Virus record (IMG/VR): IMGVR_UViG_3300042511_000879
Span: 124,001 to 188,000 of that record
Length of the DNA: 64,000 nucleotides
Strand: one strand, 5' to 3'
Shown here: piece after piece, positions 5,077-22,567 of the stretch
How the letters are laid out: the number at the start of each line of letters is the position of its first letter
Numbering within the stretch: position 1 is the first letter of the stretch
Program-made: the position numbers and the translations under genes
The notes under the pieces: model-generated
Databases searched by the model: none
Seen by the model: only the letters and a program-made list of their open reading frames with translations
Told to the model about the DNA's origin: nothing

Positions 5077-5460
5077 TTATATATTTGATTCTATTATTGG
5101 AGAACTAAAAAGTGGTCCCATAATTGTGGTAGGACTAATTAATAAAGCTATTTTCCCCTCTAGATTTGTTTTCATCCAATCCAATTTAGATATTTGGGTT
5201 TCTTCTCCTGGTAGAGTTTCTGGTATGGCTCCTAAGATTGATTCTAACCAACCTTCTACATCTGATGTTGTTACATCATTATAAGGAGTAAAGTCTTCAG
5301 GATTTGGTTCTCCTATTGTGGTTACTCCATACATTTCAGATGTTATTCCATTTTCATCTGTAGCACGGTATCTCCAGTGAATATTTTGGATTACGTCCGA
5401 TAATCCGTCTAGGCTTACAGCTCTTTCTACAGCTGGAATTGTCCAATTAAATGTTATCAT
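5077..5460 (-). CDS. Small tail-fibre-associated protein (DUF7936-like), paralog 2
   Basis: FNW...VIQNIHWRY...FTPYNDVT...V.GW pattern. Confidence 0.5.
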   Translation of the reverse strand: MITFNWTIPAVERAVSLDGLSDVIQNIHWRYRATDENGITSEMYGVTTIGEPNPEDFTPYNDVTTSDVEGWLESILGAIPETLPGEETQISKLDWMKTNLEGKIALLISPTTIMGPLFSSPIIESNI

Positions 5461-5478: not shown

Positions 5479-7239
5479 TTAATTAACGTGTGAATATTTG
5501 TAAATGTCTCCATTATAAACGCAGAAGTATACGTCGTATCCGGTTACAGTTGATACAATACAAGTATCTGTCCAATTTCTAGGTGTTAGTCCTAGGGCAG
5601 TAAATTGAGGGCCTTGACCACCACTACCAAAATCTCCAGGTCGGTATTGCCTAATGTCTCCAGTAGTTGTGGAACTTGATTCTCCAGTCCACATGTCGGT
5701 ATTTGGTGCTATACTAAATCTTTTTGAATATGAAAATATGCTCGCATATTCAAACGTTGATGAAGCTGCTGGTTTTACGTACATTCCGGAACTTCCTGCA
5801 CTAACATATATGTCTCCATTAGCTGCAGTGGCCATACCTTCCCAGTTTCTAATAGTCTGTCCTGTTGTTGTAAATGTTGTTGCTCCAGATGGTTGTTTAT
5901 AAATATCTCCACCATATACACTAGCATAAATATCCCCATTTGGTGTTGCTGTTATACCATTCCAGTTTCTAATAGTCTGTCCTGTTGCAGTAAATGTTGT
6001 TGCTCCACTTGCTTGCTTAAGTATATCTCCAGTATATAGTGCATAATACATGTCTCCATTGGGAGCACCTGCGAAACAACCTGCTCCGGGTATAGTCTGT
6101 CCTGTTGCTATAAATGTGCCACTAGCTGCGGATTTTTTATAGATAGCTCCAGTACTAATGGAAGCATATATATCTCCATTAGCCGCGTCTCCAATAGACG
6201 TCCATGTTCTAGAAGTTTGACCTAACGGAGAAAGACTTGGAGTACTCCAACTATTTCCTTGTGATATATAAAATGTAGCCGAAGCTGCGGATTCGTTACC
6301 TGATAAATCAACAGCAGTAACCCACCAAGTAATTGGGGCGCCACCACCAAAACCTCCAAAGAATGTATTGCTAATGCGCATTGCACTTTTTCCAACAAGA
6401 TAAGATCCTATGGTATCATAACGCGTCGGAAGAGAAATATTTCTTGGTCTAGTATATTTTCCTAAAGTAGAAAATAGTATAGGGAATATTTTAGGTACAA
6501 TATGAATTGTCTGTACTGTAAAACTTCCAGATTCCCTAACATATAGGTTATAGTGATGCAACATATCATTGTCAGTTGAAGGATCCCATGTAAAATCAAT
6601 ATACCTCGTAGTACCTCCAATTATAGACTTTGCTCCCGTAAAGTTAGGAGGTGTTGATGGAGCCACATTAGGACTTTCATAAACTGAAGTATAAATTCCT
6701 TGAATTATGCTAGATTCGTCTATATAATATATAAGGGGATTTGTCCCTCCTTGTCGTTGATACCATCCTTGAGAATATGTTTCTTCTACTCCAAACCCAG
6801 AAGCACCTCCAGTATTACTACCATATACTATTGAACCTACTACCGGTGGGTTATCTGTTACCCAAAATGATACAAAAAGCGAATCATTTTGAACTAATGG
6901 ACCGCCGTAATCGGTATGTTTATAAGAAACGTATTTGGCCACGATTGTATCTGCAACCGTAGAATATATCCATGAATTTGTTGGGTCTATATTTATTCCG
7001 TAATATACCAATGGAACTCCACTTGCCCAAGCACTTTTAGGAACTAATTGTAAACTCCCATACGTACTTAAATTACTTGCATTAAGGCTATATTTTGCCT
7101 GCATAGCAGTTTTATCCATACATTGATTAGCCGCAGGAAGTGTTGTAAAATGAGACTGACCCGACAGCAGAGGAATTCCACTCGTCGAGGCATCTAGATA
7201 ACTAACCATTTGATTACTTGCAACATCATTCCATGCCAT
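5479..7239 (-). CDS. Virion protein with FN3-like domain and C-terminal beta-propeller
   Basis: FN3-like P.TP.NF...FTWDPS.D...YNLY...VTAVDLSGNES; about 40-aa repeats TFTATGQTIRNW.G.A..PNGDIY. Confidence 0.65.
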   Translation of the reverse strand: MAWNDVASNQMVSYLDASTSGIPLLSGQSHFTTLPAANQCMDKTAMQAKYSLNASNLSTYGSLQLVPKSAWASGVPLVYYGINIDPTNSWIYSTVADTIVAKYVSYKHTDYGGPLVQNDSLFVSFWVTDNPPVVGSIVYGSNTGGASGFGVEETYSQGWYQRQGGTNPLIYYIDESSIIQGIYTSVYESPNVAPSTPPNFTGAKSIIGGTTRYIDFTWDPSTDNDMLHHYNLYVRESGSFTVQTIHIVPKIFPILFSTLGKYTRPRNISLPTRYDTIGSYLVGKSAMRISNTFFGGFGGGAPITWWVTAVDLSGNESAASATFYISQGNSWSTPSLSPLGQTSRTWTSIGDAANGDIYASISTGAIYKKSAASGTFIATGQTIPGAGCFAGAPNGDMYYALYTGDILKQASGATTFTATGQTIRNWNGITATPNGDIYASVYGGDIYKQPSGATTFTTTGQTIRNWEGMATAANGDIYVSAGSSGMYVKPAASSTFEYASIFSYSKRFSIAPNTDMWTGESSSTTTGDIRQYRPGDFGSGGQGPQFTALGLTPRNWTDTCIVSTVTGYDVYFCVYNGDIYKYSHVN

Positions 7240-9941
7240 TATTTCTCTAATTGTTTTATTCTGTTCTCCAATTCTTGTATCTTTGCAACCAGGACTTCAA
7301 TGTAATTTATTGTAAGCATTCCATCATCACCTTTATTAACCTGGTCAGGATATGTTTCTTGAACTTCTTGTGCAACATATCCTATATGTATCTTAGTATC
7401 TCGTCCATCCTTCCAGGTAAATTTAATAGTATCTCCATCTCTTTCAATAATATCTTTTAACCTAGCATCAGATGTATTAAAGAATCCAGGAGATGTAACA
7501 TTTGTTGAAAAGTACCCTGCTCCAGTTACATTTAGTTTGTATCCATTTGGGTTTGTATTTCCTATACCTACACCTGTCCCATTATCGTAAATTTGACTAT
7601 TTGCTAAACTATATCCATCTGTGTATTTTGATAAATAATTAGCTGTTCCTACTCCTGTAAATGCTACATCTTTAAATGAAGAATATGCTGTTGCAGATCC
7701 CCATGTCTGTTGCCAGATACGCATTCCTATTGCATCTTTTCTGAACATTACTAGGTTATCATTTCCTCCTGAAGAGTCTTGATATGATCTCAGATGTATG
7801 AAATCTGCATAAGGTCCAGTATTATTGTTTGCCCAAGAAGTGAATCCAAACTTAAGTCTGTTTGCTGTTGATTCACTTGGTGAAATTGTCCTATTATCCT
7901 CTCCAGTTAGTAGTCCCGAAGTTGTAGCCGTAGCAGAGTTTCCTGTAATATTAATACCCCAATCTCCTGATGCAACGCTTTTTATAGAAATCATCGCATT
8001 TGTAGGAGATACTGAACGATAATAATTATCTCCTTGTTTAGTAATAAATGAACTAATTGATGTTCCACTTCCTGGATTGCCATCATCAGACATATTTATA
8101 TAGTTACCATTAATATATCCATTACCATCTCTTACAACAATATAATTTCCTAATGTTGATGTAGATGCATGGTAATTATCAACAGTATCTGCATTAGTTG
8201 CATTAGTTGCTGTACCTGTTAAGGCTCCTATAAAGGTTGTTGCGGAAATATCTCCAATAATTTCTGTACTTCTCTTCGCAGGTAAGGGATTTGCTGCCCA
8301 TGCAATTGATGTAAAACTTGGTACAACTGTTGAATACATATCAAATAAAACATATGGAGTACTTGAATTTGAAGCCCATATATATACTCCTACCCAACCT
8401 CCTACTACCTCTATATTACCTATTCTTAAGTAATCCGCAGCTGACGCTACTGCTGCGGATAGTCGCGTTTGTCCTGAATTTATTGAAGTTGCGCCGAGTG
8501 ATGTATAAATACCGAATTCTATTTCAAGAACTCCCATAATAGGTGCCCAGTTCCAATCACCTCCTACTCGGATTCTACCTCCTGCAAAAGCGGCGCCAGC
8601 CGAAGTATTGTATAATCTTACAAACCATCTACCACTTCCGGCATCGTTTCCAATTCCAGGGTAAGGAAGTACTATTCTTCTAAAATAATGGCCTGTATCT
8701 AATTTAATACTTCCATGTAATACAGTTTCAACGGTACTTGAAGTACCTAAAACAATTTGATTATTTTTAGTTGTAATTGCCTGGTATCCTATAGCTACAC
8801 TATTAGTAACATTAGCTAACTGCCCAACAATACCTCCTGCCTCTGAACCAATAAAAGTGTTTTGAGACCCACTTATAATAAGCGAGCCTGATAAATTTCC
8901 AATGGCAGTATTGTTATTTCCTGTAACAATCTTTAAAGATTGATGCCCAATAGCTGTAGTGAAACTACTTCCAGTTGGTGTTTGAGATACTGCTTGATAT
9001 CCGAGTACTGTATTTTGATTTCCCGTGTTATCGAGTAATGTATTTAAACCAATTCCTATATTAGTAGCGGCATTATTACCACCTCTCCATATAGTAATTG
9101 TATTTACTATAATATTATCCGTAAAGTTTTTTAGTCCTGAAAATTGTTGGTTATTTATTGTAATTACTCCTCCAAAAGCGGTTGTAGCTGGTTGCAAGGT
9201 TAAAGTACCACTTATTAATGTAGCACCAGTTGCATTAGATGCCGTTGCTACCGAAGGAATAGGAGCTAGAGTTGATACACTTGGCGCACCTTGTTCTCCC
9301 ATAGGTCCAAAAACACAATTCTTTAGTCCATTTATCGATGATACATTAGCAAAACTAGAATCAAGATACAATGGAGCTCCAATTGCTCTTGGTACAATTC
9401 TTATAGTTACACCATCTTTCAAATATCTTATATTATAACCATCGTATGTAATTGATACTATAGTATCTGTTGTAAATGTAGAAGATGGATTAATGAATAC
9501 ATTACTTTCATAGATATACAAAATGTTTTCATTTATAAACCATGCATAATCAATAGATGTGTATGAAGAATTAAGTGTTGGATCACTATTTAATCCAACC
9601 ATTAAAGCAAGTCCTATAGTAGTTGTTAATTGAGTTGACATATAACATCCTCTAGCATATCCTTCCGCAGAATATACTTGTCCATCCCATTGACCGGCAT
9701 TACCTGCTGCTTTATAAAAAGCATTTGAATTTTCACCGTAAGTAACACCACCGCTAAATAATGGCGTCCAATTTGAAGTACCTCTAAACCCTTGGAAACC
9801 TTGTACTCCTTGGAAACCTTGGAAACCTCGTACTCCTTGGAAACCTTGGAAACCTCGTACTCCTTGATATCCTTGATATCCTTGATATCCTTGATATCCT
9901 TGAAAACCTTGTGTTAATCCGACGTATGGGTAATGTGCCAT
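7239..9941 (-). CDS. Tail fibre/spike with short collagen segment, YadA-like head repeats and C-terminal peptidase S74 intramolecular chaperone
   Basis: GxQ repeats at the N-terminus; NT.LGYQA/TAIG..S repeats; SDARLKDI...GYVAQEV...YPD.V...INY followed by a coiled coil. Confidence 0.8.
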   Translation of the reverse strand: MAHYPYVGLTQGFQGYQGYQGYQGYQGVRGFQGFQGVRGFQGFQGVQGFQGFRGTSNWTPLFSGGVTYGENSNAFYKAAGNAGQWDGQVYSAEGYARGCYMSTQLTTTIGLALMVGLNSDPTLNSSYTSIDYAWFINENILYIYESNVFINPSSTFTTDTIVSITYDGYNIRYLKDGVTIRIVPRAIGAPLYLDSSFANVSSINGLKNCVFGPMGEQGAPSVSTLAPIPSVATASNATGATLISGTLTLQPATTAFGGVITINNQQFSGLKNFTDNIIVNTITIWRGGNNAATNIGIGLNTLLDNTGNQNTVLGYQAVSQTPTGSSFTTAIGHQSLKIVTGNNNTAIGNLSGSLIISGSQNTFIGSEAGGIVGQLANVTNSVAIGYQAITTKNNQIVLGTSSTVETVLHGSIKLDTGHYFRRIVLPYPGIGNDAGSGRWFVRLYNTSAGAAFAGGRIRVGGDWNWAPIMGVLEIEFGIYTSLGATSINSGQTRLSAAVASAADYLRIGNIEVVGGWVGVYIWASNSSTPYVLFDMYSTVVPSFTSIAWAANPLPAKRSTEIIGDISATTFIGALTGTATNATNADTVDNYHASTSTLGNYIVVRDGNGYINGNYINMSDDGNPGSGTSISSFITKQGDNYYRSVSPTNAMISIKSVASGDWGINITGNSATATTSGLLTGEDNRTISPSESTANRLKFGFTSWANNNTGPYADFIHLRSYQDSSGGNDNLVMFRKDAIGMRIWQQTWGSATAYSSFKDVAFTGVGTANYLSKYTDGYSLANSQIYDNGTGVGIGNTNPNGYKLNVTGAGYFSTNVTSPGFFNTSDARLKDIIERDGDTIKFTWKDGRDTKIHIGYVAQEVQETYPDQVNKGDDGMLTINYIEVLVAKIQELENRIKQLEK

Positions 9942-9969
9942 TGTTTATTTTTATTATTTTTAAAAAGAC

Positions 9970-10073
9970 CGGAGGATAGGGAGGGATACGAACATCATTT
10001 TTCCCGAAGGAACAGTTACGAACAACTATGTTCCCAAAGGAACAAGAACGGACTTCTACCTCCCTATCCTCCG
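9970..10073 (-). ncRNA. Candidate structured RNA/DNA element: perfect 15-bp outer inverted repeat enclosing two tandem hairpin repeats
   Basis: CGGAGGATAGGGAGG (9970-9984) pairs with CCTCCCTATCCTCCG (10059-10073). Inside on the minus strand are TGTTCC-TTTG-GGAACA and TTCC-TTCG-GGAA hairpins, each followed by TGTTCGTA. GC-rich for an intergenic space. Confidence 0.5.
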
Positions 10074-10080
10074 ACTTATA

Positions 10081-13000
10081 TTATGGTAAGTGAGTTTCAA
10101 ACATACATTTTAATACAGTTGGCACATGTAGCGGATTAATAAATGCACATGGATTACCATATAATGCACTTGCGGCATAATCTAACATGAAAGGCGCTTT
10201 ATGATGTATAATTTTAATAACTCTACTTAATGGTCCGGAAACAATTTCACCATAATGTAAACCCGTGACAGGATTAATTGGACCTGCATTTCCATCCCAA
10301 GCAACATATCTAAATGCAACATACATAGGAATATAAACTGGAGAATATGCAAATCTAGATGTAGGCAGATTCTTCTGGGAACGCTTATTTGCCGATGGTA
10401 CATAAGTATAATAGTCAGCGTCCTGTCCTGATTGATCACGATACTTTACTAAAAACTCTTGCCATCTTCCTGAAATCATCGGAGCTAAATTTATATATTG
10501 GTTATGACCTGTTACTTCAAAATGATTAGGTCTATCAACTCCTATAAACCCGGTTGTGATATTATTCTGATGATTTCCAGATCGGTTCCAATAGTTATTT
10601 CCCCATGCAGGATATGGAAAACTTCCATTAGGGTACCATGGCGCCGGTACTATATAACCTCCACCTGGACGATAATTTGGTTTCTTATTTTTCTTTCTAT
10701 AAAGAACCATTTCTATATATATATTATCATATACATTAAATACTTCCGATGACAAATCTTGTGTAATTGCGTATGGTGCAGAATCTAATGTTAATACGCT
10801 TCCGGCGGAATTAGTTACCATATTAATGGAATTAATTACTATAGGATCACCTAACTTAATTGATGGCACTGGCAAATTTCCTTTACCAATTGTCCCTTTT
10901 TCTCCCATCGGTCCAAAAACCAAATTTATTAACTTTTTGGTTGATGATACGTAATAAAGACTAGAATCAAGATACAATGGAGCTCCAATTACTCTTGATA
11001 CAGTTCTTTGTACTACTCCATCTTTCCAATATCTTATATTATAACCATCATATGTTATACTTAATACGGTATTTGCGAAAGTTCCTCCATAAGTTATTGC
11101 ATCTCCATTAATATCAACAGTGACACTTCCATTTTCAATTATATAAAGATCACCTGCTGCGCAGTACCAACAATAATCGATACTAGTATAACTACTATTG
11201 GCTGTTGGATCGCTATTTAATCCAACCATAAGTTGTTCACCAGTATTACTTAATTGAGTTGATACATAAGCTCCTCTAGTATATCCTTCTAAAGAATATA
11301 CTTGTCCATCCCATTGAGCATCATTACCTGTTGCTTTATAGAAAGTATTTGAATTTTCTGCATAAGTTACTCCGCCATTGAATAATGGTGTCCAATTTGA
11401 TGAACCTCTAAAACCTTGGAAACCTTGGGCTCCTTGTATTCCCTGAGCACCTTGGAAACCTTGAGCACCTTGTATTCCTTGAGCACCTTGGAAACCTTGA
11501 GCACCTTGGAAACCTTGGGCTCCTCCGAGTGCAATACTACTCCTAAAACCAACAGTCCCATCACTTTCTTTTACAAGAATATCGGTTGTTGTTCCGGCTG
11601 GAACAGTTGTAATTTTAAGTTTTGCTCCTGTTGTAATGTTTTTGTCACCATCCCAAGTAAACGGTTTTTCAATTTCGCTACCTAGTCCTTGATCACCCCA
11701 TCTTGCACTTAAAAGTTTAATTGACGAAATCCGAATTGGAGCCGGAGTTGTAGCTGTAAGTGTTAAACGAGAATATGCATCTCCGCCATACCAATTAACA
11801 TAAAACCACGCAGCGATTGCATTATGATTATTTGTCGAAGTATGTCTTACTATCCAATTTATATTATCTGCAGAAGTTTCATATACAACATTTTTTATTG
11901 GTGCTGTAGCTGTATAAGTTGAACCAATAACTAACCATTCTCCTATTGACCACTCCATTCCTGTCCAATTCCATCTTACAGAAGTTACTGTAACTCCATC
12001 AGCAACTTCGATTGTTTGATTTTCTTTTTGCGCAAATACTTCTTTATTAAGCGTTGCTGCATTATATGTTACATTATTAGATGAAGTTGAAAATGTTGGT
12101 GAAAACCTAGAAAATGCAAATAAGTCATGCCATAAATAAGGTGATATTGGTGTTTGAGCTACTTGTGTCGTATCACTTGTTATTACCTTATTTGTTAATG
12201 TTCCGTTTTGTTTAAAATTATCAATTCCAAGTGCTATAATAGAACCAGCTCCATTAACTAGGTCAGTTCCATTAAATGTTAAATTAGCTTCAGCATTAGC
12301 AGTATTTGTACCACCATCTGAAGTTAAAACTCTATTATCTGATGGGTTTGTTATTGTTGTAAATCCAGGTCCTTGGAAACCTTGAGCGCCTTGGAAACCT
12401 TGGGCTCCTTGGAAACCTTGAGCACCTTGGAAACCTTGGGCTCCTTGTCTACCTTGAGCTCCTTGGAAACCTTGGGCACCTTGGAAACCTTGAGCACCTT
12501 GTATTCCTTGGGCTCCTTGGAAACCTTGAAAACCCTGGGCTCCTTGTATTCCTTGGGCTCCTTGGAAACCTTGGGCTCCTTGTCTACCTTGAGCTCCTTG
12601 GAAACCTTGGGCACCTTGGAAACCTTGGGCTCCTTGTATTCCTTGGGCACCTTGGAAACCTTGGGCACCTTGGAAACCTTGAGCACCTTGTATTCCTTGG
12701 GCACCTTGGAAACCTTGGGCTCCTTGTATTCCTTGGGCTCCTTGTATTCCCTGAGCACCTTGAAATCCTTGGGCACCTTGAAAACCTTGGGCTCCTTGTA
12801 TTCCCTGAGCACCTTGAAAACCTTGAACACCTTGGAAACCTTGGGCTCCTTGTATTCCTTGAGCACCTTGAAAACCTTGGAAACCTTGGGCTCCTTGTAT
12901 TCCCTGAGCACCTTGTATTCCCTGAGCACCTTGAAAACCTTGGGCACCTTGTATTCCTTGAGCACCTTGGAAACCTTGAGCTCCTTGGAAACCTTGAGCA

Positions 13001-16000
13001 CCTTGGAAACCTTGGGCTCCTTGTATTCCTTGGGCTCCTTGTATTCCTTGGGCACCTTGGAAACCTTGTATTCCCTGAGCACCTTGGAAACCTTGGGCTC
13101 CTTGTCTACCTTGGGCACCTTGAAAACCTTGGGCTCCTTGTATTCCTTGGGCTCCTTGGAAACCTTGGGCTCCTTGTATTCCTTGAGCACCTTGAAAACC
13201 TTGGAAACCTTGGGCTCCTTGTGGTCCTTGTTCTCCCATTGGTCCAAAAACAACATTCTTTAAACCATTAGGTGTACCATTAGTATATGATATTGTACGG
13301 AAGAAAGTAGAATCAAAATATAGAGCGTTACCTATTGCCCTTGCAACAGTTCGTTGTAGAATACCATCTTTCCAATATCTTACATTATAACCATCATATG
13401 TTATTTGTAAAATAGTATCTGATGTATATGCACCTAAAGCAACTATTACACCTCCACTTTCATAGATTTCTACACTATTGTATTCAGTGACATACCATGC
13501 ATAATTAATACCTGGAAAACTAGGCGATGCAGAAGGATTATCACTTAAACCAAATAGTATATAATTAAGATTTGATTGTGGTTGAGCCGATACATAACAT
13601 CCTCTAGTATAACCCTCTAATGAATATACTTCAGCATCAAAAATATCATCGTTACCTATTGCTTTATGAAATATATTTGAATTTGCACCATATACTGTGC
13701 CACCATTAAAAACAGGTGTCCAATTTGCTACTCCTCTAATTCCTTGGAAGCCTTGAGCACCTTGGAAACCTTGGGCTCCTTGTATTCCCTGAGCACCTTG
13801 AAAACCTTGGGCTCCTTGTATTCCCTGAGCACCTTGAAAACCTTGGGCTCCTTGTATTCCCTGAGCACCTTGAAAACCTTGGGCTCCTTGTATTCCTTGA
13901 GCTCCTTGAAAACCTTGAGCACCTTGAAAACCTTGGGCACCTTGGAAACCTTGAGCACCTTGTATTCCTTGAGCACCTTGAAAACCTTGTGCTCCTTGTC
14001 TACCTTGTGCTCCTTGTATTCCTTGAGCACCTTGAAAACCTTGAGCACCTTGAAAACCTTGTGCTCCTTGTATTCCTTGAGCACCTTGAAAACCTTGGGC
14101 TCCTTGTATTCCCTGAGCACCTTGGAAGCCTTGAGCACCTTGAAAACCTTGAAAACCTTGGGCACCTTGTATTCCTTGGGCACCTTGAAAACCTTGGGCT
14201 CCTTGTATTCCCTGGGCACCTTGAAAACCTTGGGCTCCTTGTATTCCTTGAGCACCTTGGAAGCCTTGAGCTCCTTGTATTCCTTGAGCACCTTGAAAAC
14301 CTTGGGCTCCTTGTATTCCTTGAGCACCTTGGAAGCCTTGAGCACCTTGAAAACCTTGAAAACCTTGGGCACCTTGTCTACCTTGGGCTCCTTGGAAACC
14401 TTGGGCTCCTTGTATTCCCTGAGCACCTTGAAAACCTTGGGCTCCTTGTATTCCTTGGGCACCTTGGATTCCTTGGGCACCTTGTATTCCTTGAGCACCT
14501 TGTATTCCTTGAGCACCTTGAGCACCTTGGAAACCTTGAGCACCTTGTATTCCTTGGGCACCTTGAGCACCTTGGAAACCTTGAGCACCTTGGAAACCTT
14601 GAGCACCTTGGAAACCTTGTACTCCTTGAGCACCTTGGAAACCTTGGGCACCTTGGAAACCTTGGATTCCTTGGGCACCTTGGATTCCTTGGGCACCTTG
14701 TATTCCTTGAGCACCTTGTATTCCTTGAGCACCTTGTATTCCTTGAGCACCTTGGAAACCTTGGGCACCTTGGAAACCTTGAGCACCTTGGAAACCTTGG
14801 GCACCTTGGATTCCTTGGGCACCTTGTATTCCCTGGGCACCTTGTATTCCCTGGGCACCTTGGAAACCTTGGGCACCTTGGATTCCTTGGGCACCTTGGA
14901 AACCTTGAGCACCTTGTATTCCTTGAGCACCTTGTATTCCTTGAGCACCTTGGATTCCTTGAGCACCTTGTATTCCCTGGGCACCTTGTATTCCTTGGGC
15001 ACCTTGGAAACCTTGAGCACCTTGTATTCCCTGGGCACCTTGTATTCCTTGAGCTCCTTGGATTCCTTGAGCACCTTGGATTCCTTGAGCACCTTGGATT
15101 CCTTGAGCACCTTGGATTCCTTGAGCACCTTGGATTCCCTGAGCACCTTGTATTCCTTGGGCACCTTGTATTCCTTGAGCACCTTGAAAACCTTGTGCTC
15201 CTTGTATTCCTTGAGCACCTTGAAAACCTTGAGCACCTTGAAAACCTTGTGCACCTTGAAAACCTTGAACACCTTGGAAACCTTGGGCTCCTTGTATTCC
15301 TTGAGCACCTTGAAAACCTTGGGCTCCTTGTATTCCTTGAGCACCTTGTATTCCTTGAGCACCTTGGAAACCTTGTACTCCTTGAGTTCCTTCAATACCT
15401 AATGATGTTACAACATAAGAATAGTATTGACTACCTTCTGTATAAAAAGTAACAGGATGATTACCTGAAGATTGATCGACTACATAGACATTAACAATCA
15501 TTCTATCCGTAGGATCAATTTGATATGATGCAGGTATTACTAAATCTACGTAATTTTCAACTGGTATAGTGGATTCAATCCAACCTATAAGTACTTGATT
15601 TGTTGATATTGGCGCTGCTGCGTATGGTGTACCGGTACTATCTGCTAGTTGTATAGTACAGAATGTATCTGTATTAAAACCAGTTGCTCCTTTTAAGAAA
15701 TGTAAATGAAATTTTTGAGGTCCTGGTGGAATAACATTAACTCCTAATCCACTTGCATCAGTAATATATGTTTGAACTAATACTGGAGTTGTTCCAGTAG
15801 TTGTTACTGTAATAGTTTGAACCGATCCAGTGGTTGGTAATGTACCTATTTGTTTATATTCTAAAGGTGTCTGTGTTACTGATTGATTAAAATAGTATAT
15901 CTGTCCGGATGAAACGCCTAATGGACCTTGGTCACCTTGAAAACCTTGAGCTCCTTGTATTCCCTGAGCACCTTGGAAACCTTGGGCACCTTGAAAACCT

Positions 16001-17172
16001 TGGGCACCTTGAAAACCTTGAAATCCTTGGGCTCCTTGTATTCCTTGGGCACCTTGAAAACCTTGGGCACCTTGAAAACCTTGAAATCCTTGGGCACCTT
16101 GAAAACCTTGGGCACCTTGAAAACCTTGAAATCCTTGGGCTCCTTGTATTCCCTGAGCACCTTGGAAACCTTGGGCACCTTGAAAACCTTGGGCACCTTG
16201 AAAACCTTGGGCACCTTGAAAACCTTGAAAACCTTGGGCACCTTGAAAACCTTGAAAACCTTGGGCTCCTTGTATTCCCTGAGCACCTTGGAAACCTTGG
16301 GCTCCTTGTATTCCCTGAGCTCCTTGTATTCCCTGAGCACCTTGTAATCCTTGGGCTCCTTGAAAACCTTGGGCTCCTTGAAAACCTTGTATTCCCTGAG
16401 CACCTTGAAAACCTTGGGCACCTTGTATTCCCTGGGCGCCTTGAAATCCTTGAGCACCTTGTATTCCTTGAGCACCTTGTATTCCCTGAGCACCTTGAAA
16501 ACCTTGGGCACCTTGGAAACCTTGGGCTCCTTGAAAACCTTGAGCACCTTGAAAACCTTGTATTCCTTGGGCTCCTTGTATTCCCTGAGCACCTTGAAAT
16601 CCTTGGGCTCCTTGTATTCCCTGGGCGCCTTGAAATCCTTGAGCACCTTGAAATCCTTGGGCTCCTTGTATTCCCTGAGCACCTTGAAAACCTTGGGCAC
16701 CTTGGAAACCTTGGGCTCCTTGTATTCCCTGGGCACCTTGTATTCCTTGGGCTCCTTGTATTCCCTGAGCACCTTGAAAACCTTGGGCACCTTGGAAACC
16801 TTGGGCTCCTTGTATTCCCTGGGCGCCTTGGAAACCTTGAGCACCTTGAAATCCTTGGGCTCCTTGTATTCCTTGGGCACCTTGAAAACCTTGGGCACCT
16901 TGAAAACCTTGGGCGCCTTGGAAACCTTGAGCACCTTGTCTACCTTGGGCACCTTGTATTCCTTGAGCACCTTGAAATCCTTGAGCACCAGTTCCTTGGA
17001 AGCCTTGAGCACCTTGGAAACCCTGAGGACCATTAGCTGGCCCTTGAGGACCTTGAGGTCCTGTGTCAACAGTTCCACCTAGATTTTTTAGTGAACCATA
17101 TTTGTCATGGACGAATACCGGACCTAGGTCTGTGCTGGAATTTCCATATTTATCTAGTCTTTGTATGTTCAT
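10081..17172 (-). CDS. Giant collagen-like (Gly-X-Gln) fibre protein, 2363 aa
   Basis: Four GAQ/GFQ/GIQ triplet blocks separated by globular domains. Confidence 0.85.
11404..11522 (-). repeat. Collagen block 4 (about 40 aa)
   Basis: Gly-X-Gln periodicity; boundaries approximate. Confidence 0.85.
12368..13235 (-). repeat. Collagen block 3 (about 290 aa)
   Basis: Gly-X-Gln periodicity; boundaries approximate. Confidence 0.9.
13738..15392 (-). repeat. Collagen block 2 (about 550 aa)
   Basis: Uninterrupted Gly-X-Gln periodicity; boundaries approximate. Confidence 0.9.
15921..17063 (-). repeat. Collagen block 1 (9-nt unit tandem repeat)
   Basis: GGTGCTCAA/GGTTTCCAA/GGAATACAA-type units; boundaries approximate. 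Confidence 0.9.
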
Positions 17173-17468
17173 GAAACTTCGGCTGATATGTAGTATGTGG
17201 TATTGGGTTGTGTAGATTCTAGGTGAATATAATCACCTTTTGCAAATTTATATTGAGTAACATCTCTAACTGAATCTCCATCATTTAAGATAAACTTGTA
17301 AAGAAGCGTTTCAATAGCCCCTGCAGCAGTATCAAGTCGGCTAACTGTAAGATTGTAACTCGCGGTTATATTATTGATAACTAGAAGAGAAATTATCATG
17401 CTATCGTAGGCGCAATTTATTTGAGTTCCGCCTGGAATATCAATGGTACCTTGAAATACTAAATTCAT
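17169..17468 (-). CDS. Hypothetical structural protein
   Basis: 99 aa ORF with ATGA overlap with the collagen gene; late-type motif upstream. Confidence 0.6.
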   Translation of the reverse strand: MNLVFQGTIDIPGGTQINCAYDSMIISLLVINNITASYNLTVSRLDTAAGAIETLLYKFILNDGDSVRDVTQYKFAKGDYIHLESTQPNTTYYISAEVS

Positions 17469-18872: not shown

Positions 18873-19931
18873 TTAAAAACCACAGCTCGCACTAGTGTCT
18901 CCAATAACACCTTCTGTTGATATTTCGTATAAGCCACCGTCCCAATAAGTTCCAGACGCAGGATAGGCTTGAGTTTGATTTAATCCAAAATAAAGACCAC
19001 CTCCATTATAAGGAAATGTTAAAAGAGAATTAGTATATACGATATCTCCAGTAGAAAGTGCAGCTAGACTTTTTGCAGCAAAAAGAGGTTCAGTGACTTC
19101 ATACGGAGGAGCGCAGCCTGGGTTAGTTTCAAAAACGTTGTCGGATCCGCCAATGGGAGTCCTATAAAATTGATAAAATGCAGGAACTTCCAGTCGATTA
19201 ACTAATTTAATGTTACCTTGAGGCACTGAATTAACCTTGAATGTTGCACCCGGTGATATACTTAATACATATTGTCCTAATCCAGGAGTTCCAGTTTCTA
19301 CTACAAGGTATGGTGCCGTTCCGGAAATGTTCAATGCAGTGTAAAGAATAGAATCAGTAGGTGGCGATAGATATAAATAATCATAATTATAATCTACAAG
19401 TGCAAGTCGGATATCCGGTTGTGTGTTAAACGCATCAATAGCATTGGCATTTAAAGATATAGCATTCCATCCATCGGTTGGAGCTACTGGAGTTGCAATA
19501 TAATCGGTAGTATTACCGCTCATTGATCCACCTGTGTTGTATCCTGATATTTGGAAGAAATCAGCTGCTGAAATATTTGTGGTAGTTGATGGTTTATCTG
19601 CCTGCACTACCATAATATTATTAGCTAGATCTCCTCCAAAGTGTACCCATAATGTTGCAGAAGTGATTTGAGTTGTAAAGCCACTGTCCATTGTAGAAAA
19701 TGCCATAAAGTATCTACTAATTGCTGCTCGCCAATTGCCGAATGTGAAATTGTTCCAAGAAGCTCCAATGGAGTCTTGTACATCTTGATTAACTCTAGCA
19801 ATAGGAAGGTTACCATATCCATTATCACGGTTAGATAGCCATTGATTTTGGTCAAATTGTTCTCCAAAGGAATCTGAATCTTCAACTAAAATGCTTCCTC
19901 TAGTTGTCGCTGATGTTATATTATATTCCAT
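18873..19931 (-). CDS. Virion structural protein
   Basis: 352 aa, T/S/G/N-rich and beta-rich, adjacent to the collagen gene. Confidence 0.55.
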   Translation of the reverse strand: MEYNITSATTRGSILVEDSDSFGEQFDQNQWLSNRDNGYGNLPIARVNQDVQDSIGASWNNFTFGNWRAAISRYFMAFSTMDSGFTTQITSATLWVHFGGDLANNIMVVQADKPSTTTNISAADFFQISGYNTGGSMSGNTTDYIATPVAPTDGWNAISLNANAIDAFNTQPDIRLALVDYNYDYLYLSPPTDSILYTALNISGTAPYLVVETGTPGLGQYVLSISPGATFKVNSVPQGNIKLVNRLEVPAFYQFYRTPIGGSDNVFETNPGCAPPYEVTEPLFAAKSLAALSTGDIVYTNSLLTFPYNGGGLYFGLNQTQAYPASGTYWDGGLYEISTEGVIGDTSASCGF

Positions 19932-22567
19932 TATTCTAAAATTGATGATATTAGTTCAACCCAAGTTTGATCTGGATTAAAATAGATTGTTGATGTATTA
20001 TCTATATTATGTCCAATAATTCTAACTACATTACCTGAAGCAGTTGGGGCTGTTGCTGTAAATAATCCATCACTGGTAGACATGTATAGGGTTGATCCTG
20101 ATATTGAAGTAGTGTATGATGCTGCATTATATCTAGCATATCCTCTTATTAACATACCAGCTGCTGGATTTGTTCCGAGTGCTATAGCAAGCATTCCTAA
20201 CGAATGCGTAGTTGATGTTGAATTTGTTAATGTCCATGTTAATGATGAATTTAGGTAATATAATGATCCTGGCGTAAATCCTTGAGCACCAGTTCCAAAA
20301 TATGCAATTTCACCAGATGATGCAGGAGCAGCAGCAGGAGGTACATAATTTCCTCCGGTTCCTTGATAGCCTTGATATCCTTGAAAACCTTGAGCACCTT
20401 GGAATCCTTGAGCACCTTGGAAACCTTGAGCACCAGTTCCTTGGGCACCTTGGAAGCCTTGAGCACCTTGGAAGCCTTGAGCACCTTGGAAACCTTGAGC
20501 ACCTTGGAATCCTTGAGCACCAGTTCCTTGAGCACCTTGGAAACCTTGAGCACCAGTTCCTTGAGCACCTTGGAAGCCTTGAGCACCTTGGAATCCTTGA
20601 GCACCTTGGAAACCTTGAGCACCAGTTCCTTGAGCACCTTGGAATCCTTGAGCACCAGTTCCTTGAGCACCTTGGAATCCTTGAGCACCAGTTCCTTGGG
20701 CACCTTGGAATCCTTGGAAACCTCGATCACCTCGATCACCGGCTCTACTAAATGTAACCATTGCTCCTGTTCCTGGTACCATGGTACCAATACCTCCTAT
20801 ATAACTAACAGTTATGTAACCCATATTACTTACGCTAGTAGAAAGTATTTGATAATCTGCGTAATCGGAGGTTCTTCCTAAACGGCTAATTCGTAAATTA
20901 CCTTTAATTGGGTTCGTACTAGTACCCAATGCAGTTACCCAGCTAGTGGAACTTGCACCATCAGCATCAAAATTACTAGTAAAGATAGTTGTTGTAGTTG
21001 CAAATGTAGTGCCATTAAATCCAATACCCCCGGGCGGTGGAGATTGAAAAGTACCATAAAAATTAACAACAAACCTTAAACTATCTCCTCCATAATTTCC
21101 AAAACTTCCTTGTATTCCCTGAAAACCTTGGGCTCCTTGGAATCCTTGATCACCTTGGAAACCTTGGGCTCCTTGTATTCCTTGAGCACCTTGATATCCT
21201 TGATATCCTCGATCTCCAATGTCTCCTGTTCTTTGGAACGTAATATAAGCACGTTGGTCTGGAGGTGCAGTTCCACCAACAGGGCTAGAAATAAATGCAA
21301 TTGGAACGTCGAAATGGTCATTATGTTCAGTATGGTTACCTGTTATATTAAAAAGTGCATAAAGTAGAGGGTCAGTATATGAGGTTATTTTAAACGTACC
21401 TTTAATTTGAGAAGATGAGTCATCAATTGTCTGTAAGAATGATTGGATATCCACTGAGTTATAGTCTAAATATGAAATATACATCATTGTACCAAATTCA
21501 TTGATTCTTACATGTCCTGCAGTCAAATTTGTAGGATCAGTTGTAATATCATCATAATAAAACTCAAACGTTGCTCCACCAAAAGATCCTGGTTCACCTT
21601 GGTCTCCTTGTGTTCCTTGAAATCCTTGTACACCTTGTGCACCTTGAAATCCTTGAAATCCTCGAGGACCTGTTTTTGCATATGATACTATAAGTTCAGT
21701 ACCTACAGGCCAAGTTGTTCCAATAGCAGATACAGTTCCTCCAACGTATGATAATTCAATAGTACTATAAGTTCCAGTGCTTCCACCAGTTATTGTATAG
21801 TCTAAATATTCAGTTGTTCTGCCTGGTTTGGTAATTCTTAAACTTCCTCCAAGTGCAATCATTGAAGTAAACCATGCAGTTGCATTTGCATTATCATCAT
21901 CCGTATTGCTTGCAATAATAGTAAGAGTTGGGCTAGGAAGTGTTGTTGTATTACTAAATGTAATTGCTCCAAATCCCGCAGTAACTCCATTATAACTTCC
22001 TACTAAAAATCTTAAACTATCTCCACCATAATTTCCTACTGATCCTACAGATCCTTGATGTCCTTGTCTACCTTGAAAACCTTGATAACCTTGATAACCT
22101 TGGGCTCCAGGAGTTCCAGGGCTTCCAGGTGTACCTACAGCTGAAGCTCCTTGTGTTCCTTGAAAACCTTGCGTTCCTTGTCGACCTTGAGCACCTTGAA
22201 AACCTTGGAAACCTTGTCTACCTTGAGCTCCTTGTCGACCTTGAAATCCTTGGTCTCCTGTAGTTGTAGCAACTGCAGTAGGTACCCATACCCTGTCGCC
22301 AACGAGTGCTCCAGCTAGGATTAAAGCAGTATCACCCGAGGTTACAATATATAATTTAAGTACCTTTTCAACATCATTATCAATATCGATAGTTCCATCA
22401 TTATTAGTTCCCATTACTCTGAATCCATGAATAACTTGTCCAATTAAGTCCAAGTTGTAATCCATTTCTGGGTGAAATAAGGCTCTTCCAAGTTCTCCTG
22501 GATATAAAGGGTTATATTTACCCAATGGTCCTCGTTCTTCAGAATTTTGTAAATTATCTTGTGGCAT
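19931..22567 (-). CDS. Second collagen-like (Gly-X-Gln) fibre protein, 878 aa
   Basis: GxQ blocks including GAQGTGAQ variants, separated by GGDSLRF/GGATFEF domains; TATAAATA twice upstream (22574-22587). Confidence 0.8.
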   Translation of the reverse strand: MPQDNLQNSEERGPLGKYNPLYPGELGRALFHPEMDYNLDLIGQVIHGFRVMGTNNDGTIDIDNDVEKVLKLYIVTSGDTALILAGALVGDRVWVPTAVATTTGDQGFQGRQGAQGRQGFQGFQGAQGRQGTQGFQGTQGASAVGTPGSPGTPGAQGYQGYQGFQGRQGHQGSVGSVGNYGGDSLRFLVGSYNGVTAGFGAITFSNTTTLPSPTLTIIASNTDDDNANATAWFTSMIALGGSLRITKPGRTTEYLDYTITGGSTGTYSTIELSYVGGTVSAIGTTWPVGTELIVSYAKTGPRGFQGFQGAQGVQGFQGTQGDQGEPGSFGGATFEFYYDDITTDPTNLTAGHVRINEFGTMMYISYLDYNSVDIQSFLQTIDDSSSQIKGTFKITSYTDPLLYALFNITGNHTEHNDHFDVPIAFISSPVGGTAPPDQRAYITFQRTGDIGDRGYQGYQGAQGIQGAQGFQGDQGFQGAQGFQGIQGSFGNYGGDSLRFVVNFYGTFQSPPPGGIGFNGTTFATTTTIFTSNFDADGASSTSWVTALGTSTNPIKGNLRISRLGRTSDYADYQILSTSVSNMGYITVSYIGGIGTMVPGTGAMVTFSRAGDRGDRGFQGFQGAQGTGAQGFQGAQGTGAQGFQGAQGTGAQGFQGAQGFQGAQGFQGAQGTGAQGFQGAQGTGAQGFQGAQGFQGAQGFQGAQGFQGAQGTGAQGFQGAQGFQGAQGFQGYQGYQGTGGNYVPPAAAPASSGEIAYFGTGAQGFTPGSLYYLNSSLTWTLTNSTSTTHSLGMLAIALGTNPAAGMLIRGYARYNAASYTTSISGSTLYMSTSDGLFTATAPTASGNVVRIIGHNIDNTSTIYFNPDQTWVELISSILE

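What the first reader, a model, noticed from the sequence alone, without database searches (positions are those of the whole stretch)
10081..17172. 2363-aa proline-poor Gly-X-Gln collagen with about 1260 triplet-region residues
Seen: four blocks of about 380, 550, 290 and 40 aa in which Y is almost always Gln and X alternates Ala with Phe/Ile (occasionally Arg, Val or Leu), with almost no Pro. The blocks are separated by globular domains. Established: collagen triple helices rise about 0.29 nm per residue, and bacterial/phage collagens usually rely on Pro or charged pairs. Inference: a total helix length near 360 nm, longer than vertebrate type I collagen, stabilised by an unusual Gln/aromatic code. 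It may be an extremely long capsid or tail filament for host capture in dilute water, and a possible biomaterial. The 9-nt DNA repeats should allow rapid length change.
Basis: partly seen in the sequence, partly recalled or inferred. Interest (0 to 1): 0.65.

Follow-up and report, generated by a model that had tools for sequence, protein, structure and literature searches.

The report
Giant glutamine-collagen fibre of lake phage
A roughly 234-kb phage from lake water encodes a 2363-residue fibre protein in which 1278 residues are collagen-type Gly-X-Gln triplets with almost no proline or charge. It is real and unusually pure, but it belongs to a wider, undescribed group of very long collagen-like phage fibres, some of them longer.

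Summary
ORF 10081..17172 (-) encodes 2363 aa with 426 Gly-X-Y triplets in runs of 5+119, 186, 98, 14 and 4. Y is Gln in 412 of 426. X alternates Ala with Phe/Ile. There are six Pro and no KGE/KGD.

The gene and 22 kb around it are base-identical in three further IMG/VR contigs, and all 101-mers in the gene are unique, so an assembly artefact is unlikely.

The window comes from a ~234-kb phage of lake metagenomes with a T4-type baseplate wedge protein. Its portal is nearest to uncultured 462-735-kb phages. The gene lies among other fibre genes that also use Gly-X-Gln.

The five globular parts are shuffled modules. Two have a SPRY/ConA-like lectin fold (pLDDT 90.5). The C-terminal one (pLDDT 94.5) is always C-terminal in 147 protein clusters and has no known fold relative.

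The most likely reading is a trimeric "beads on a collagen rope" virion fibre of about 365 nm summed helix, with a longest single helix of about 160 nm. Triple-helix formation was not shown.

It is not unique. Gly-X-Gln arrays are common in metagenomic phage fibres. A fibre with the same domain plan uses Gly-Thr/Ser-Ser instead, and such relatives reach more than 700 triplets.

I rate it a new variant of a known kind, of moderate interest.

The parts
10081..17172 (-). Whole coding sequence, 2363 aa, 241.9 kDa, pI 5.8 (protein P0001)
   Evidence: DNA identical in three other IMG/VR contigs
17032..17172 (-). N-terminal 47 residues before the first triplet run; presumed attachment end
   Evidence: only a weak PHROG tail-fibre match to residues 23-60 (E 1.7e-4); a short NI..LDK motif resembles the N-termini of three baseplate-side fibres; inference
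15910..17031 (-). Array 1, residues 48-421: 5 + 119 Gly-X-Gln triplets with one Gly-Thr-Gly break at residues 63-64
15400..15909 (-). Globular domain D1, residues 422-591; no family. 33-79% identical copies occur in 30 metagenome loci, mostly flanked by Gly-Thr/Ser-Ser arrays
13726..15399 (-). Array 2, residues 592-1149: 186 uninterrupted triplets (about 160 nm), 36-nt higher-order DNA period
13246..13725 (-). Globular domain D2, residues 1150-1309: 51-52% identical to D4, so assigned the same SPRY/ConA-like fold by homology (only D4 was folded). Entered through the junction G-I-R-G-..-NWTP and left through FGPMGE
   Evidence: (phrog_19691, 1.4e-19)
12364..13245 (-). Array 3, residues 1310-1603: 98 triplets (about 84 nm)
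   Evidence: (PF01391, 174.7 bits)
11524..12363 (-). Globular domain D3, residues 1604-1883; no family. Homologues in P0005, P0020 and P0050
   Evidence: the F5/8-type-C lead was not borne out
11398..11523 (-). Array 4, residues 1884-1925: 14 triplets
10915..11397 (-). Globular domain D4, residues 1926-2086: SPRY/ConA-like lectin beta-sandwich (model pLDDT 90.5)
10879..10914 (-). Four-triplet mini-run, residues 2087-2098, linking D4 to D5
10084..10878 (-). C-terminal domain D5, residues 2099-2363: beta-rich, model pLDDT 94.5, C-terminal in all 147 related clusters found, no known fold relative. Presumed distal tip and/or trimerisation nucleus
17169..17468 (-). 99-aa ORF whose stop overlaps the fibre gene's start (ATGA); possibly translationally coupled; no family
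9965..10077 (-). Compound hairpin followed by a T run just after the stop codon; terminator-like
   Evidence: -51.7 kcal/mol, z = -7.3
7239..9941 (-). Neighbouring fibre gene (900 aa): 15 Gly-X-Gln/Arg triplets, a copy of the SPRY-like domain, and a C-terminal Peptidase_S74 chaperone domain
19931..22567 (-). Neighbouring collagen-like tail-fibre gene (878 aa): 89 triplets, Y = Gln in 64

Best explanation
The gene encodes a structural fibre of a ~234-kb lake-water phage that has a T4-type baseplate. Three copies of the 242-kDa chain most likely assemble in parallel into a 'beads on a rope' filament. It would have four main collagen-type triple helices of about 102, 160, 84 and 12 nm made of (Gly-Ala-Gln-Gly-Phe/Ile-Gln)n, joined by trimeric globular nodes. 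The short N-terminus would anchor it to the virion, and the conserved C-terminal domain D5 would form the far tip. In this picture the helices are an uncharged, amide-rich spacer that sets the reach. The two SPRY/ConA-like nodes and the tip would do the binding, probably to surface polysaccharide or protein of a Bacteroidota host. The nodes would also fix the register and nucleate folding of helices that have no proline and no salt bridges. The fibre would enlarge the capture radius of a slowly diffusing large virion and make the first reversible contact. Shown: the sequence anatomy, the reproducibility of the assembly, the phage and fibre-cluster context, the folds of D4 and D5, the modularity of the domains, and purifying constraint on Gly and Gln. 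Inferred: trimer and triple-helix formation, orientation, point of attachment, ligand and host.
For: Collagen signature: 426 triplets, with PF01391 at 174.7 bits. Constraint: none of the 417 Gly positions in the four main arrays is replaced although three Gly codons are in use (GGT 243, GGA 165, GGC 10). Gln is kept at 408 of 417 Y positions with both codons used. Windows of 54 nt are only 70-80% identical, so the arrays are not fresh copies. Gly periodicity is kept while X/Y composition is replaced wholesale in a relative with the same domain plan (L026: D1 75%, D4-D5 44% identical, arrays Gly-Thr/Ser-Ser). GAQ/GFQ/GIQ stretches are also embedded in ordinary mixed collagen sequence (GPQ, GEP, GDK) in another phage's fibre. 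Virion context: neighbours match tail-fibre and tail-spike PHROGs and Peptidase_S74. The SPRY-like module occurs in Cellulophaga phage phi13:1 gp015, annotated as structural from MS/MS. A stand-alone D5 protein lies in a phage cluster beside collagen-repeat proteins. Phage identity: portal, head protease and gp6-like baseplate wedge, with the portal nearest to 462-735-kb uncultured phages, Lak phages and phage PAU. Conserved junction motifs lead into and out of the SPRY-like node in three proteins. Assembly: four identical contigs and unique 101-mers. Habitat: lake or fresh water, partial or fuller matches in runs filed under 18 studies. From established knowledge: phage collagen-like side-tail proteins are trimers with globular ends (PMC3368898); Ala at X and Gln at Y are among the more favourable non-imino residues in host-guest peptides (Persikov et al. 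2000, from memory).
Against: No experiment or model here shows a trimer or a triple helix; the one complex prediction gave no verdict. Phe and Ile at X are poor triple-helix formers in host-guest data (from memory), and there are neither imino acids nor Lys-Glu/Asp pairs, the usual stabilisers (PMC11923368). The gene lies about 150 kb along the record from the baseplate module, so attachment to the tail is not established. The protein lacks the Peptidase_S74 chaperone that its neighbour and most long relatives carry. The N-terminal anchor is only 47 residues with weak similarity to other fibres. The host is inferred only from distant kinship to Flavobacterium and Cellulophaga phages and to huge phages.
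Confidence: 0.7

Rival explanations
1. Same molecule, different place: a head, neck or whisker fibre, or capsid decoration, rather than a baseplate fibre. It would act as a tether or environmental sensor instead of the primary receptor-binding fibre.
For: The gene lies in a fibre cluster (G000 26-47 kb) far from the baseplate module at 193-216 kb. That module has its own three fibres, which share an N-terminal motif the giant protein only vaguely resembles. Precedents from knowledge: the collagen-like capsid binder gp12 of SPP1 (cited in PMC11923368), T4 whiskers, and head-fibre-like appendages on Tenacibaculum jumbo phage PTm1 (from memory).
Against: Neighbours match tail-fibre and tail-spike families and carry an S74 chaperone domain typical of tail fibres. 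T4 also keeps its long-tail-fibre genes apart from its baseplate genes (knowledge). There is no similarity to known decoration proteins.
Confidence: 0.3
2. The Gly-X-Gln arrays do not form collagen triple helices. They would instead be disordered, Gln-rich low-complexity linkers acting as an entropic brush or gel former, or would pack as polyglycine-II/PPII bundles like those of snow-flea antifreeze protein or the phage S16 gp38 adhesin.
For: There is no imino acid and no salt bridge. Phe/Ile at X are weak helix formers (from memory). Strict periodicity could partly be inherited from tandem duplication. The complex prediction gave no support (not evidence either way).
Against: Gly and Gln are conserved across units that have diverged 20-30% in DNA. 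Gly periodicity survives a complete change of X/Y chemistry in a relative with the same domain plan. The same triplets are interleaved with classical collagen triplets elsewhere. Runs of 98-186 perfect triplets contain no turn motifs for antiparallel PPII bundles. The arrays enter and leave globular nodes through conserved junctions. Pfam Collagen scores far above its threshold.
Confidence: 0.12
3. The array lengths are an assembly artefact: repeat collapse or expansion in short-read metagenome assembly.
For: 2284 of 7062 31-mers and 596 of 7042 51-mers in the gene are non-unique.
Against: All 101-mers are unique and the longest exact repeat is 95 nt. The 7092-nt gene and 22.4 kb around it are identical in three further IMG/VR contigs of 117-236 kb from other samples, with different contig start points. 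The frame stays open through all arrays and rejoins every globular domain in frame.
Confidence: 0.04

Closest known systems
Long metagenomic phage fibre proteins with Collagen (PF01391) plus a C-terminal Peptidase_S74 chaperone (PF13884), 1300-3600 aa
   Same: Many Gly-X-Y runs with Gln dominant at Y and hydrophobic X (Ile, Val, Phe, Leu), interspersed globular modules, and phage contigs. The window's own neighbour P0003 is of this type.
   Different: Their runs are short (typically 25-56 triplets, in 17-25 runs) and contain some Pro and Thr. This protein has runs of 119, 186 and 98 triplets, 97% Gln at Y, and a different C-terminal domain instead of S74.
Gly-Thr/Ser-Ser array fibres of other freshwater phages (loci L026, L030, L048/L049; I found no description of them in the literature searched)
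   Same: They share domain D1 (33-79% identity). L026 has the same order of parts, down to the 15-triplet run, the SPRY-like node, the GPMGE linker and the D5 tip. Their arrays are equally uncharged and proline-poor and are as long or longer (626-629 and at least 704 triplets).
   Different: X/Y chemistry is Thr/Ser-Ser, which could be O-glycosylated; one such gene lies beside glycosyltransferase genes. Here it is Ala/Phe/Ile-Gln, which offers no such hydroxyl groups.
E. coli O157 prophage collagen-like side-tail proteins (EPclA/B; PMC3368898)
   Same: Phage fibre proteins in which a collagen stalk joins globular ends. They have been shown experimentally to be trimers with a dumbbell shape.
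   Different: Their stalks are short (molecule about 55-62 nm), with 48% Pro at X, many charged residues and no Phe. Their PfN/PfC domains are absent here.
Bacterial collagens Scl2 (Streptococcus) and BclA (Bacillus); recombinant Gln-rich Clostridium perfringens collagen (Xu et al. 2010, from memory; the paper is not held)
   Same: Hydroxyproline-free triple helices that depend on a flanking trimerisation domain. Polar Thr/Gln at Y are thought to build hydration networks (PMC8968730).
   Different: They rely on charged pairs, Pro at X or glycosylated Thr, and span tens of triplets. Here there is essentially no charge, Pro or Thr, and there are hundreds of triplets.
Vertebrate fibrillar collagen type I
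   Same: Long Gly-X-Y helices. phmmer aligns residues 1310-1603 to the alpha chains at E 1e-110 to 1e-125 through the repeat alone.
   Different: Type I has one uninterrupted helix of 338 triplets rich in Pro/Hyp and Lys-Glu/Asp pairs (knowledge; PMC11923368). Here four main shorter helices are separated by nodes. The similarity is compositional, not homology.

Membership tests
Collagen triple-helix repeat proteins (Pfam PF01391) | Gly at every third residue over long uninterrupted runs | tested here: met
   Runs of 119, 186, 98 and 14 triplets without interruption
Collagen triple-helix repeat proteins (Pfam PF01391) | Score above the Pfam gathering threshold | tested here: met
   174.7 bits against 27.2 on residues 1310-1603; about 30 of the 39 matches in the genome fall in this gene's frame
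Collagen triple-helix repeat proteins (Pfam PF01391) | Three chains actually form a right-handed triple helix (CD band, cooperative melt, protease resistance) | not testable with these tools
   Complex prediction of three copies of residues 1860-2110 gave no verdict. No solved structure of a Gly-X-Gln array was found by sequence
Collagen triple-helix repeat proteins (Pfam PF01391) | Usual stabilisers: imino acids, Lys-Glu/Asp pairs or glycosylated Thr | tested here: not met
   6 Pro, 3 Thr and 0 KGE/KGD in 1278 residues. This is a usual property rather than a strict requirement
Phage tail fibres with a C-terminal intramolecular chaperone (Peptidase_S74, PF13884) | S74 domain at the C-terminus | tested here: not met
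   No Pfam match in residues 2099-2363. The neighbour P0003 has it at 25 bits against a cut-off of 22
Phage virion fibre proteins in general | Encoded in a phage genome among fibre or tail genes | tested here: met
   Portal, protease and baseplate wedge are in the same record. The flanking genes match tail-fibre PHROGs
Phage virion fibre proteins in general | Presence in purified virions | not testable with these tools
   Indirect only: the homologous module occurs in phi13:1 gp015, whose 'structural protein' annotation is based on MS/MS
SPRY/B30.2 - ConA-like lectin/glucanase fold (domains D2 and D4) | Two-sheet bent beta-sandwich matching solved SPRY or L-type lectin domains | tested here: met
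   D4 model pLDDT 90.5. Foldseek E 7.5e-7 and up, prob 1.00, TM by query 0.62-0.71 to TRIM, RanBPM and HERC1 SPRY domains, and about 0.55-0.60 to the lectins Emp46p and VIP36. D2 was not folded; it is 51-52% identical to D4
SPRY/B30.2 - ConA-like lectin/glucanase fold (domains D2 and D4) | Sequence-level membership of a Pfam SPRY or lectin family | tested here: not met
   No Pfam match at E <= 0.1 apart from a sub-threshold beta-sandwich hit. This is fold resemblance only
E. coli prophage collagen-like proteins (EPclA type) | PfN (PF08400) and PfC (PF06820) end domains | tested here: not met
   No such Pfam matches in any globular part

The most novel reading that the evidence does not exclude
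(Gly-Ala-Gln-Gly-Phe/Ile-Gln)n is a self-sufficient collagen code that has not been characterised. It would be a triple helix up to 186 triplets long, held together without imino acids, salt bridges or glycosylation, by Gln amide and hydration ladders and by regularly spaced hydrophobic X residues, with trimeric globular nodes setting the register. Freshwater large phages would use it interchangeably with a second uncharged code (Gly-Thr/Ser-Ser) on the same fibre scaffold, building capture filaments 0.4-0.6 micrometres long.
Probability: 0.4. Interest if true: 0.7.

Novelty: new variant of a known kind. Interest (0 to 1): 0.55.

Why it matters
Collagen-like stalks in phage fibres are well known. 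Current accounts of how non-animal collagens fold and stay folded invoke proline at X, Lys-Glu/Asp salt bridges (recently proposed as a general folding code, PMC11923368) or polar/glycosylated Thr. This protein has 1278 collagen-signature residues that use none of these, yet Gly and Gln are under clear purifying constraint. A sister fibre built to the same domain plan replaces the whole X/Y chemistry with Thr/Ser-Ser.

That gives two natural, directly comparable test cases. One question is what the minimum requirements are for a long triple helix. The other is whether interspersed trimeric nodes can replace local stabilisers. A simple three-triplet vocabulary (GAQ/GFQ/GIQ) would also be an attractive, hydroxylation-free design for recombinant collagen materials.

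For phage ecology, it points to a group of very long filaments (hundreds of nanometres) on large freshwater phages. That bears on how slowly diffusing giant virions find rare hosts. If the arrays turn out not to be triple-helical, it would be an equally useful counter-example to reading Gly-X-Y periodicity as collagen.

Tried and rejected
- **Complex prediction.** Three copies of residues 1860-2110 scored 0.22 against a mark of 0.32. The tool's verdict was 'no answer', so this is not used as evidence either way.
- **Laying reads.** There is therefore no read-level check of length.
- **Families for the globular domains.** Pfam and PHROGs found nothing for D1, D3 or D5.
- **D3 as a discoidin domain.** The Atlas lead to F5/8-type-C scored only 0.84, which is weak. 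The family found nothing in the genome even at E <= 1. Rejected.
- **Fold of D5.** There was no match at E <= 0.001 in PDB or BFVD by Foldseek. ESM-Atlas TM-scores were at most 0.27. VIA-align's best was Z 8.4 over 85 residues, an FN3/Ig-like core within the range the tool calls common. No fold was assigned.
- **Transglutaminase.** A phage transglutaminase that could cross-link the Gln-rich rod was sought; none is present.
- **Close relatives through neighbouring genes.** Two IMG/VR scans with neighbours returned only the same phage. tblastn of D5 against isolate phages found nothing.
- **Terminal repeat.** The first 30 bases recur near the end of the record, but the 1276-nt overlap has 407 mismatches. 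It is not a repeat.
- **The 99-aa upstream ORF.** No family and no homologue in related loci.
- **Literature.** No paper held contains 'Gly-X-Gln' together with phage collagen. Searches on jumbo or huge phages plus collagen found no description of such fibres. Xu et al. 2010 is not held and is cited from memory only.
- **Relation between the two codes.** By reading the repeat units in other frames and on the other strand by hand (no tool run), I found no frame-shift or strand relation between the Gly-X-Gln and Gly-Thr-Ser DNA.


Full report
**1.

Window 10081..17172 on the minus strand is one open frame of 2363 codons with an ATG start. A run-finder gives six Gly-X-Y runs: residues 48-62, 65-421, 592-1149, 1310-1603, 1884-1925 and 2087-2098. 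They hold 5, 119, 186, 98, 14 and 4 triplets, 426 in all, or 1278 residues.

- Y is Gln in 412 triplets.
- X is Ala 193, Phe 120, Ile 86, then Arg, Val and Pro at 6 each.
- GAQ, GFQ and GIQ account for 396 of 426 triplets.
- The arrays contain D1, E3, K2 and R8, and no KGE or KGD.
- X alternates: of 413 neighbouring X pairs, 379 are Ala/non-Ala and only 2 are Ala/Ala. The true unit is the hexapeptide Gly-Ala-Gln-Gly-Phe/Ile-Gln.
- Array 2 also has a 36-nt (12-residue) higher-order DNA period.

Pfam Collagen scores 174.7 bits on one array against a cut-off of 27.2. The other long ORFs listed inside the arrays, on both strands, are by-products of stop-free repeat DNA. The real frame is the one that runs through five globular domains that have homologues.

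**2. Is the array length an assembly artefact?**

Probably not. The 417 triplets of the four main arrays use 36 different 9-mers. The longest exact repeat is 95 nt. Every 101-mer in the gene is unique, although 596 51-mers and 2284 31-mers are not. Windows of 54 nt are on average only 70-80% identical to one another, with weak decay over distance.

Three further IMG/VR contigs from other samples (236, 234 and 117 kb, with different start points) carry the 7092-nt gene and the whole 22.4-kb overlap without a single difference.

A long-read check therefore remains the decisive test. The identity of the four assemblies also means that no length variation was seen for this gene.

**3. Where it sits**

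The window is bases 24942-88941 of a 234,467-bp IMG/VR virus record, estimated by CheckV to be 77% complete. In that record 215 of 228 ORFs lie on one strand.

- The record encodes a portal, a head maturation protease and a gp6-like baseplate wedge protein.
- The portal is closest to uncultured phages of 462-735 kb (58% identity to LR756500), then to Prevotella Lak phages and Sphingomonas phage PAU.
- The only nucleotide-level match to isolates is a thymidylate synthase gene of Flavobacterium phages, at 82-84%.
- Runs filed under 18 studies hold at least part of the stretch, almost all labelled lake-water or freshwater metagenomes; 9 runs hold half of its sampled words or more.

A Bacteroidota host is therefore a reasonable but unproven guess.

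The giant gene lies in a cluster of fibre-like genes:

- Downstream is a 900-aa protein with 15 Gly-X-Gln/Arg triplets, a copy of the giant protein's repeated globular domain, tail-spike and tail-fibre PHROG matches, and a C-terminal Peptidase_S74 chaperone domain.
- Upstream, after three small unknown genes and a 99-aa ORF, is an 878-aa collagen-like tail-fibre protein with 89 triplets, Gln at Y in 64 of them.

Eight genes of the phage contain Gly-X-Y runs. Three short-collagen fibres lie beside the baseplate genes, about 150 kb away along the record, and share an N-terminal motif that the giant protein only faintly resembles.

The 99-aa ORF overlaps the start codon (ATGA). A strong compound hairpin followed by a T run comes after the stop codon (-51.7 kcal/mol, z = -7.3).

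**4. The globular parts are shuffled modules**

- **D2 (1150-1309) and D4 (1926-2086).** They are 51-52% identical paralogues. The same domain occurs in the neighbouring gene, one to four times per protein in six large metagenomic proteins with few or no collagen triplets, and, at 28% identity, in Cellulophaga phage phi13:1 gp015. That protein's 'structural protein' label is annotated as based on MS/MS. An AlphaFold2 model of D4 built from 16 sequences has pLDDT 90.5. It matches SPRY/B30.2 domains at TM by query 0.62-0.71 and L-type lectin domains at about 0.55-0.60, with Foldseek E from 7.5e-7 and prob 1.00. This is a ConA-like binding fold. The domain is entered through a conserved junction (Gly-Ile/Phe-Arg-Gly-x-x-Asn-Trp-Thr-Pro) and left through Phe-Gly-Pro-Met-Gly-Glu in all three copies in this phage and in L026. 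That is what one would expect of a node inserted into a continuing trimeric rod.
- **D5 (2099-2363).** A full HMMER search of 1.84 billion representative proteins found 147 clusters. The domain is at the C-terminal end in all of them. Most are stand-alone proteins of 250-310 aa, and only 8 carry collagen. One stand-alone copy lies in a phage gene cluster next to collagen-repeat proteins. The model from 45 sequences has pLDDT 94.5 but no convincing structural relative in PDB, BFVD or the ESM Atlas. The best result is an FN3/Ig-like core at Z 8.4 over 85 residues.
- **D1 and D3.** Neither has a family. The weak discoidin lead for D3 failed.

**5. Relatives change the picture**

*Gly-X-Gln is common.* A word-based search with the C-terminal third, restricted to proteins of 1300-4135 aa, returned 68 proteins. 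Most carry Collagen plus Peptidase_S74 domains. Most are Gly-X-Gln-rich with hydrophobic X (Ile, Val, Phe, Leu) and 200-320 triplets in many short runs. One (P0004, 3351 aa) has 499 triplets and no Pro. That search favours proteins sharing Gly-X-Gln words, so it shows the code is common, not how common.

*The pure alternating form is rare.* The exact 18-residue pattern [18 protein letters not shown] occurs in IMG/VR only in this phage and in seven contigs from seven other samples; the three examined are near-identical (up to 50 kb, apparently one phage). There it is embedded in ordinary mixed collagen sequence containing GPQ, GEP and GDK.

*Most relatives of D1 use a different code.* A metagenome scan with D1 found 30 loci at 33-79% identity. 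Nearly all flank the domain with Gly-Thr/Ser-Ser arrays:

- 626-629 triplets in 2744-2750-aa proteins (L048, L049);
- at least 704 triplets, in two uninterrupted runs of 353 and 351, in a gene that runs off the end of a 271-kb contig (L030).

*L026 follows the same domain plan.* Its order of parts is the same: array, D1 (75%), array, domain, array, domain, 15 triplets, SPRY-like node, GPMGE linker, D5 (44%). Its two middle domains are not homologous to D2 and D3, and its arrays are Gly-Thr/Ser-Ser.

So the Gly periodicity and the nodes are conserved while the X/Y chemistry is interchangeable between two uncharged, proline-poor codes.

*Small length differences do occur.* Between L048 and L049 the flanking globular segments are 99-100% identical, while three arrays differ by 1-3 triplets (94 vs 93, 84 vs 85, 125 vs 122). 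This is the only direct hint of in-frame length change, and it is small. Assembly noise cannot be excluded.

**6. What it most likely is and how it works**

The best reading is a homotrimeric virion fibre. A 47-residue anchor is followed by four main collagen-type helices of about 102, 160, 84 and 12 nm (0.286 nm per residue). Trimeric nodes lie between them, and the fibre ends in the D5 tip. The summed helix is about 365 nm, and the chain mass is 241.9 kDa.

The case for a real triple helix is indirect but has several independent lines:

- None of the 417 Gly positions in the four main arrays is replaced, although three Gly codons are in use. Gln is kept at 408 of 417 Y positions. The DNA units have diverged by 20-30%.
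- Gly periodicity is retained when X and Y are replaced wholesale.
- The same triplets are mixed with classical collagen triplets elsewhere.
- The junctions into the nodes are conserved.

From host-guest peptide data (Persikov et al. 2000, from memory), Ala at X and Gln at Y are among the better non-imino residues, while Phe and Ile at X are poor. Cold lake water also lowers the stability that is needed.

I infer that the nodes supply registration and nucleation, which such a slippery, repetitive and clamp-free helix would otherwise lack. I also infer that the rod is an electrically neutral spacer, and that the SPRY-like nodes and the tip do the binding. A flexible filament of this contour length would extend the capture radius of a large, slowly diffusing virion. 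None of this was shown here. The single complex prediction returned no verdict.

**7. Rivals**

- **Same molecule, different place (head, neck or whisker).** This cannot be excluded, because the cluster is far from the baseplate genes. Probability about 0.3.
- **Arrays that are disordered or PPII-bundled rather than triple-helical.** About 0.12. The constraint pattern and the lack of turn motifs argue against it.
- **Assembly artefact.** About 0.04.

**8. Comparison with what is known, and novelty**

It works like the known collagen-like phage fibre proteins: the trimeric, dumbbell-shaped E. coli prophage EPcl proteins (PMC3368898) and the S74-capped fibres. It meets the sequence definition of the collagen repeat family.

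It is not a member of the EPcl or S74-capped architectures, since both defining domains were tested and are absent. It also departs from the published composition baselines:

- Viral collagens have Gln at 13% of Y positions and Pro at 22% of X positions.
- Phe is absent from EPcl collagens (PMC3368898).
- KGD makes up 13% of viral triplets (PMC11923368).

In the papers I could search, I found no description of Gly-X-Gln arrays of this purity, or of the Gly-Thr/Ser-Ser giants. I therefore rate it a new variant of a known kind.

Interest is moderate, at 0.55. The protein is real and striking, and it offers a clean natural experiment on collagen folding codes. However, it is neither the longest of its kind nor alone in its chemistry, and its key property, the triple helix, is still unshown.

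Noticed in passing
L030:6194-13681, L048, L049, L026:9074-14578 (metagenome loci): Freshwater phage proteins sharing domain D1 carry enormous Gly-Thr/Ser-Ser arrays: at least 704 triplets in two runs of 353 and 351 on a 271-kb contig, and 626-629 triplets in 2744-2750-aa proteins. L026 follows the window protein's domain plan with this other code. I found no description of such arrays in the papers searched.
   Followed up: partly
L048 vs L049: Two near-identical genes from different samples (flanking globular segments 99-100% identical) differ by 1-3 triplets in three arrays. This is either small in-frame length polymorphism or assembly noise.
   Followed up: partly
L022:18256-25919 (NCBI assembly contig carrying P0005): A 1972-aa Gly-Thr-Ser fibre protein sharing domain D3 lies 2.3 kb from a block of at least four glycosyltransferase genes and a methyltransferase gene (three small genes between), which hints that the Thr/Ser arrays are glycosylated.
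   Followed up: no
window 19931-22567 (-), residues about 620-715 of the 878-aa protein: This collagen-like fibre has six regularly spaced one-residue-short interruptions (Gln-Gly-Thr-Gly-Ala-Gln, starting at residues 624, 635, 646, 669, 680 and 709). They form a periodic Gly-X-Gly break pattern inside Gly-X-Gln arrays.
   Followed up: no
window 1578-4373 (-): A 931-aa protein with ten DUF285 repeat matches (PF03382, 395 bits, a BspA-like leucine-rich-repeat type) at the edge of the fibre cluster. It is a possible further adhesin.
   Followed up: no
window 4686-5066 (-) and 5077-5460 (-): Two tandem small paralogues, both DUF7936 (PF25590, 65 and 87 bits), lie between fibre-cluster genes.
   Followed up: no
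window 17169-17468 (-): A 99-aa ORF ends in ATGA, overlapping the giant gene's start codon. It has no family and no homologue in related loci. It may be a coupled chaperone or adaptor.
   Followed up: partly
window 9965-10077 (-): A 113-nt compound hairpin (an outer stem of about 19 pairs enclosing an inner stem-loop) followed by a T run lies directly after the giant gene's stop codon. Energy is -51.7 kcal/mol with z = -7.3 against shuffles.
   Followed up: partly
window about 31062-31677: The only nucleotide-level match to isolate phages is a thymidylate synthase region, 82-84% identical to Flavobacterium phage vB_FspM_immuto. This is far closer than the rest of the genome and may reflect gene exchange or a shared host lineage.
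   Followed up: no
G000:C1:142007-143596 (outside the window; L010:12007-13596): The portal protein is 58% identical to that of a 462-kb uncultured phage and 34-37% identical to 634-735-kb uncultured phages, Lak phages and phage PAU. This places the 234-kb phage near the huge-phage lineages.
   Followed up: partly
G000:C1:193717-200407 (outside the window; L013): Three fibre genes next to the baseplate module share a conserved N-terminal motif (..NIKLDK.NYNFDQL..) followed by 12-13 mixed-composition collagen triplets. A 605-aa protein with 40 triplets lies about 5 kb from the portal gene (G000 148378-150195).
   Followed up: no
PDB 8zxl / 9ius: The best solved-structure sequence match to the arrays is a 780-residue 'spindlefibril/axialfibril' chain made of Gly-Ala-Pro, Gly-Ser-Gln and Gly-Leu-Gln triplets. 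It is a solved Gln-containing collagen-like fibril of unknown source that may be worth comparing.
   Followed up: no
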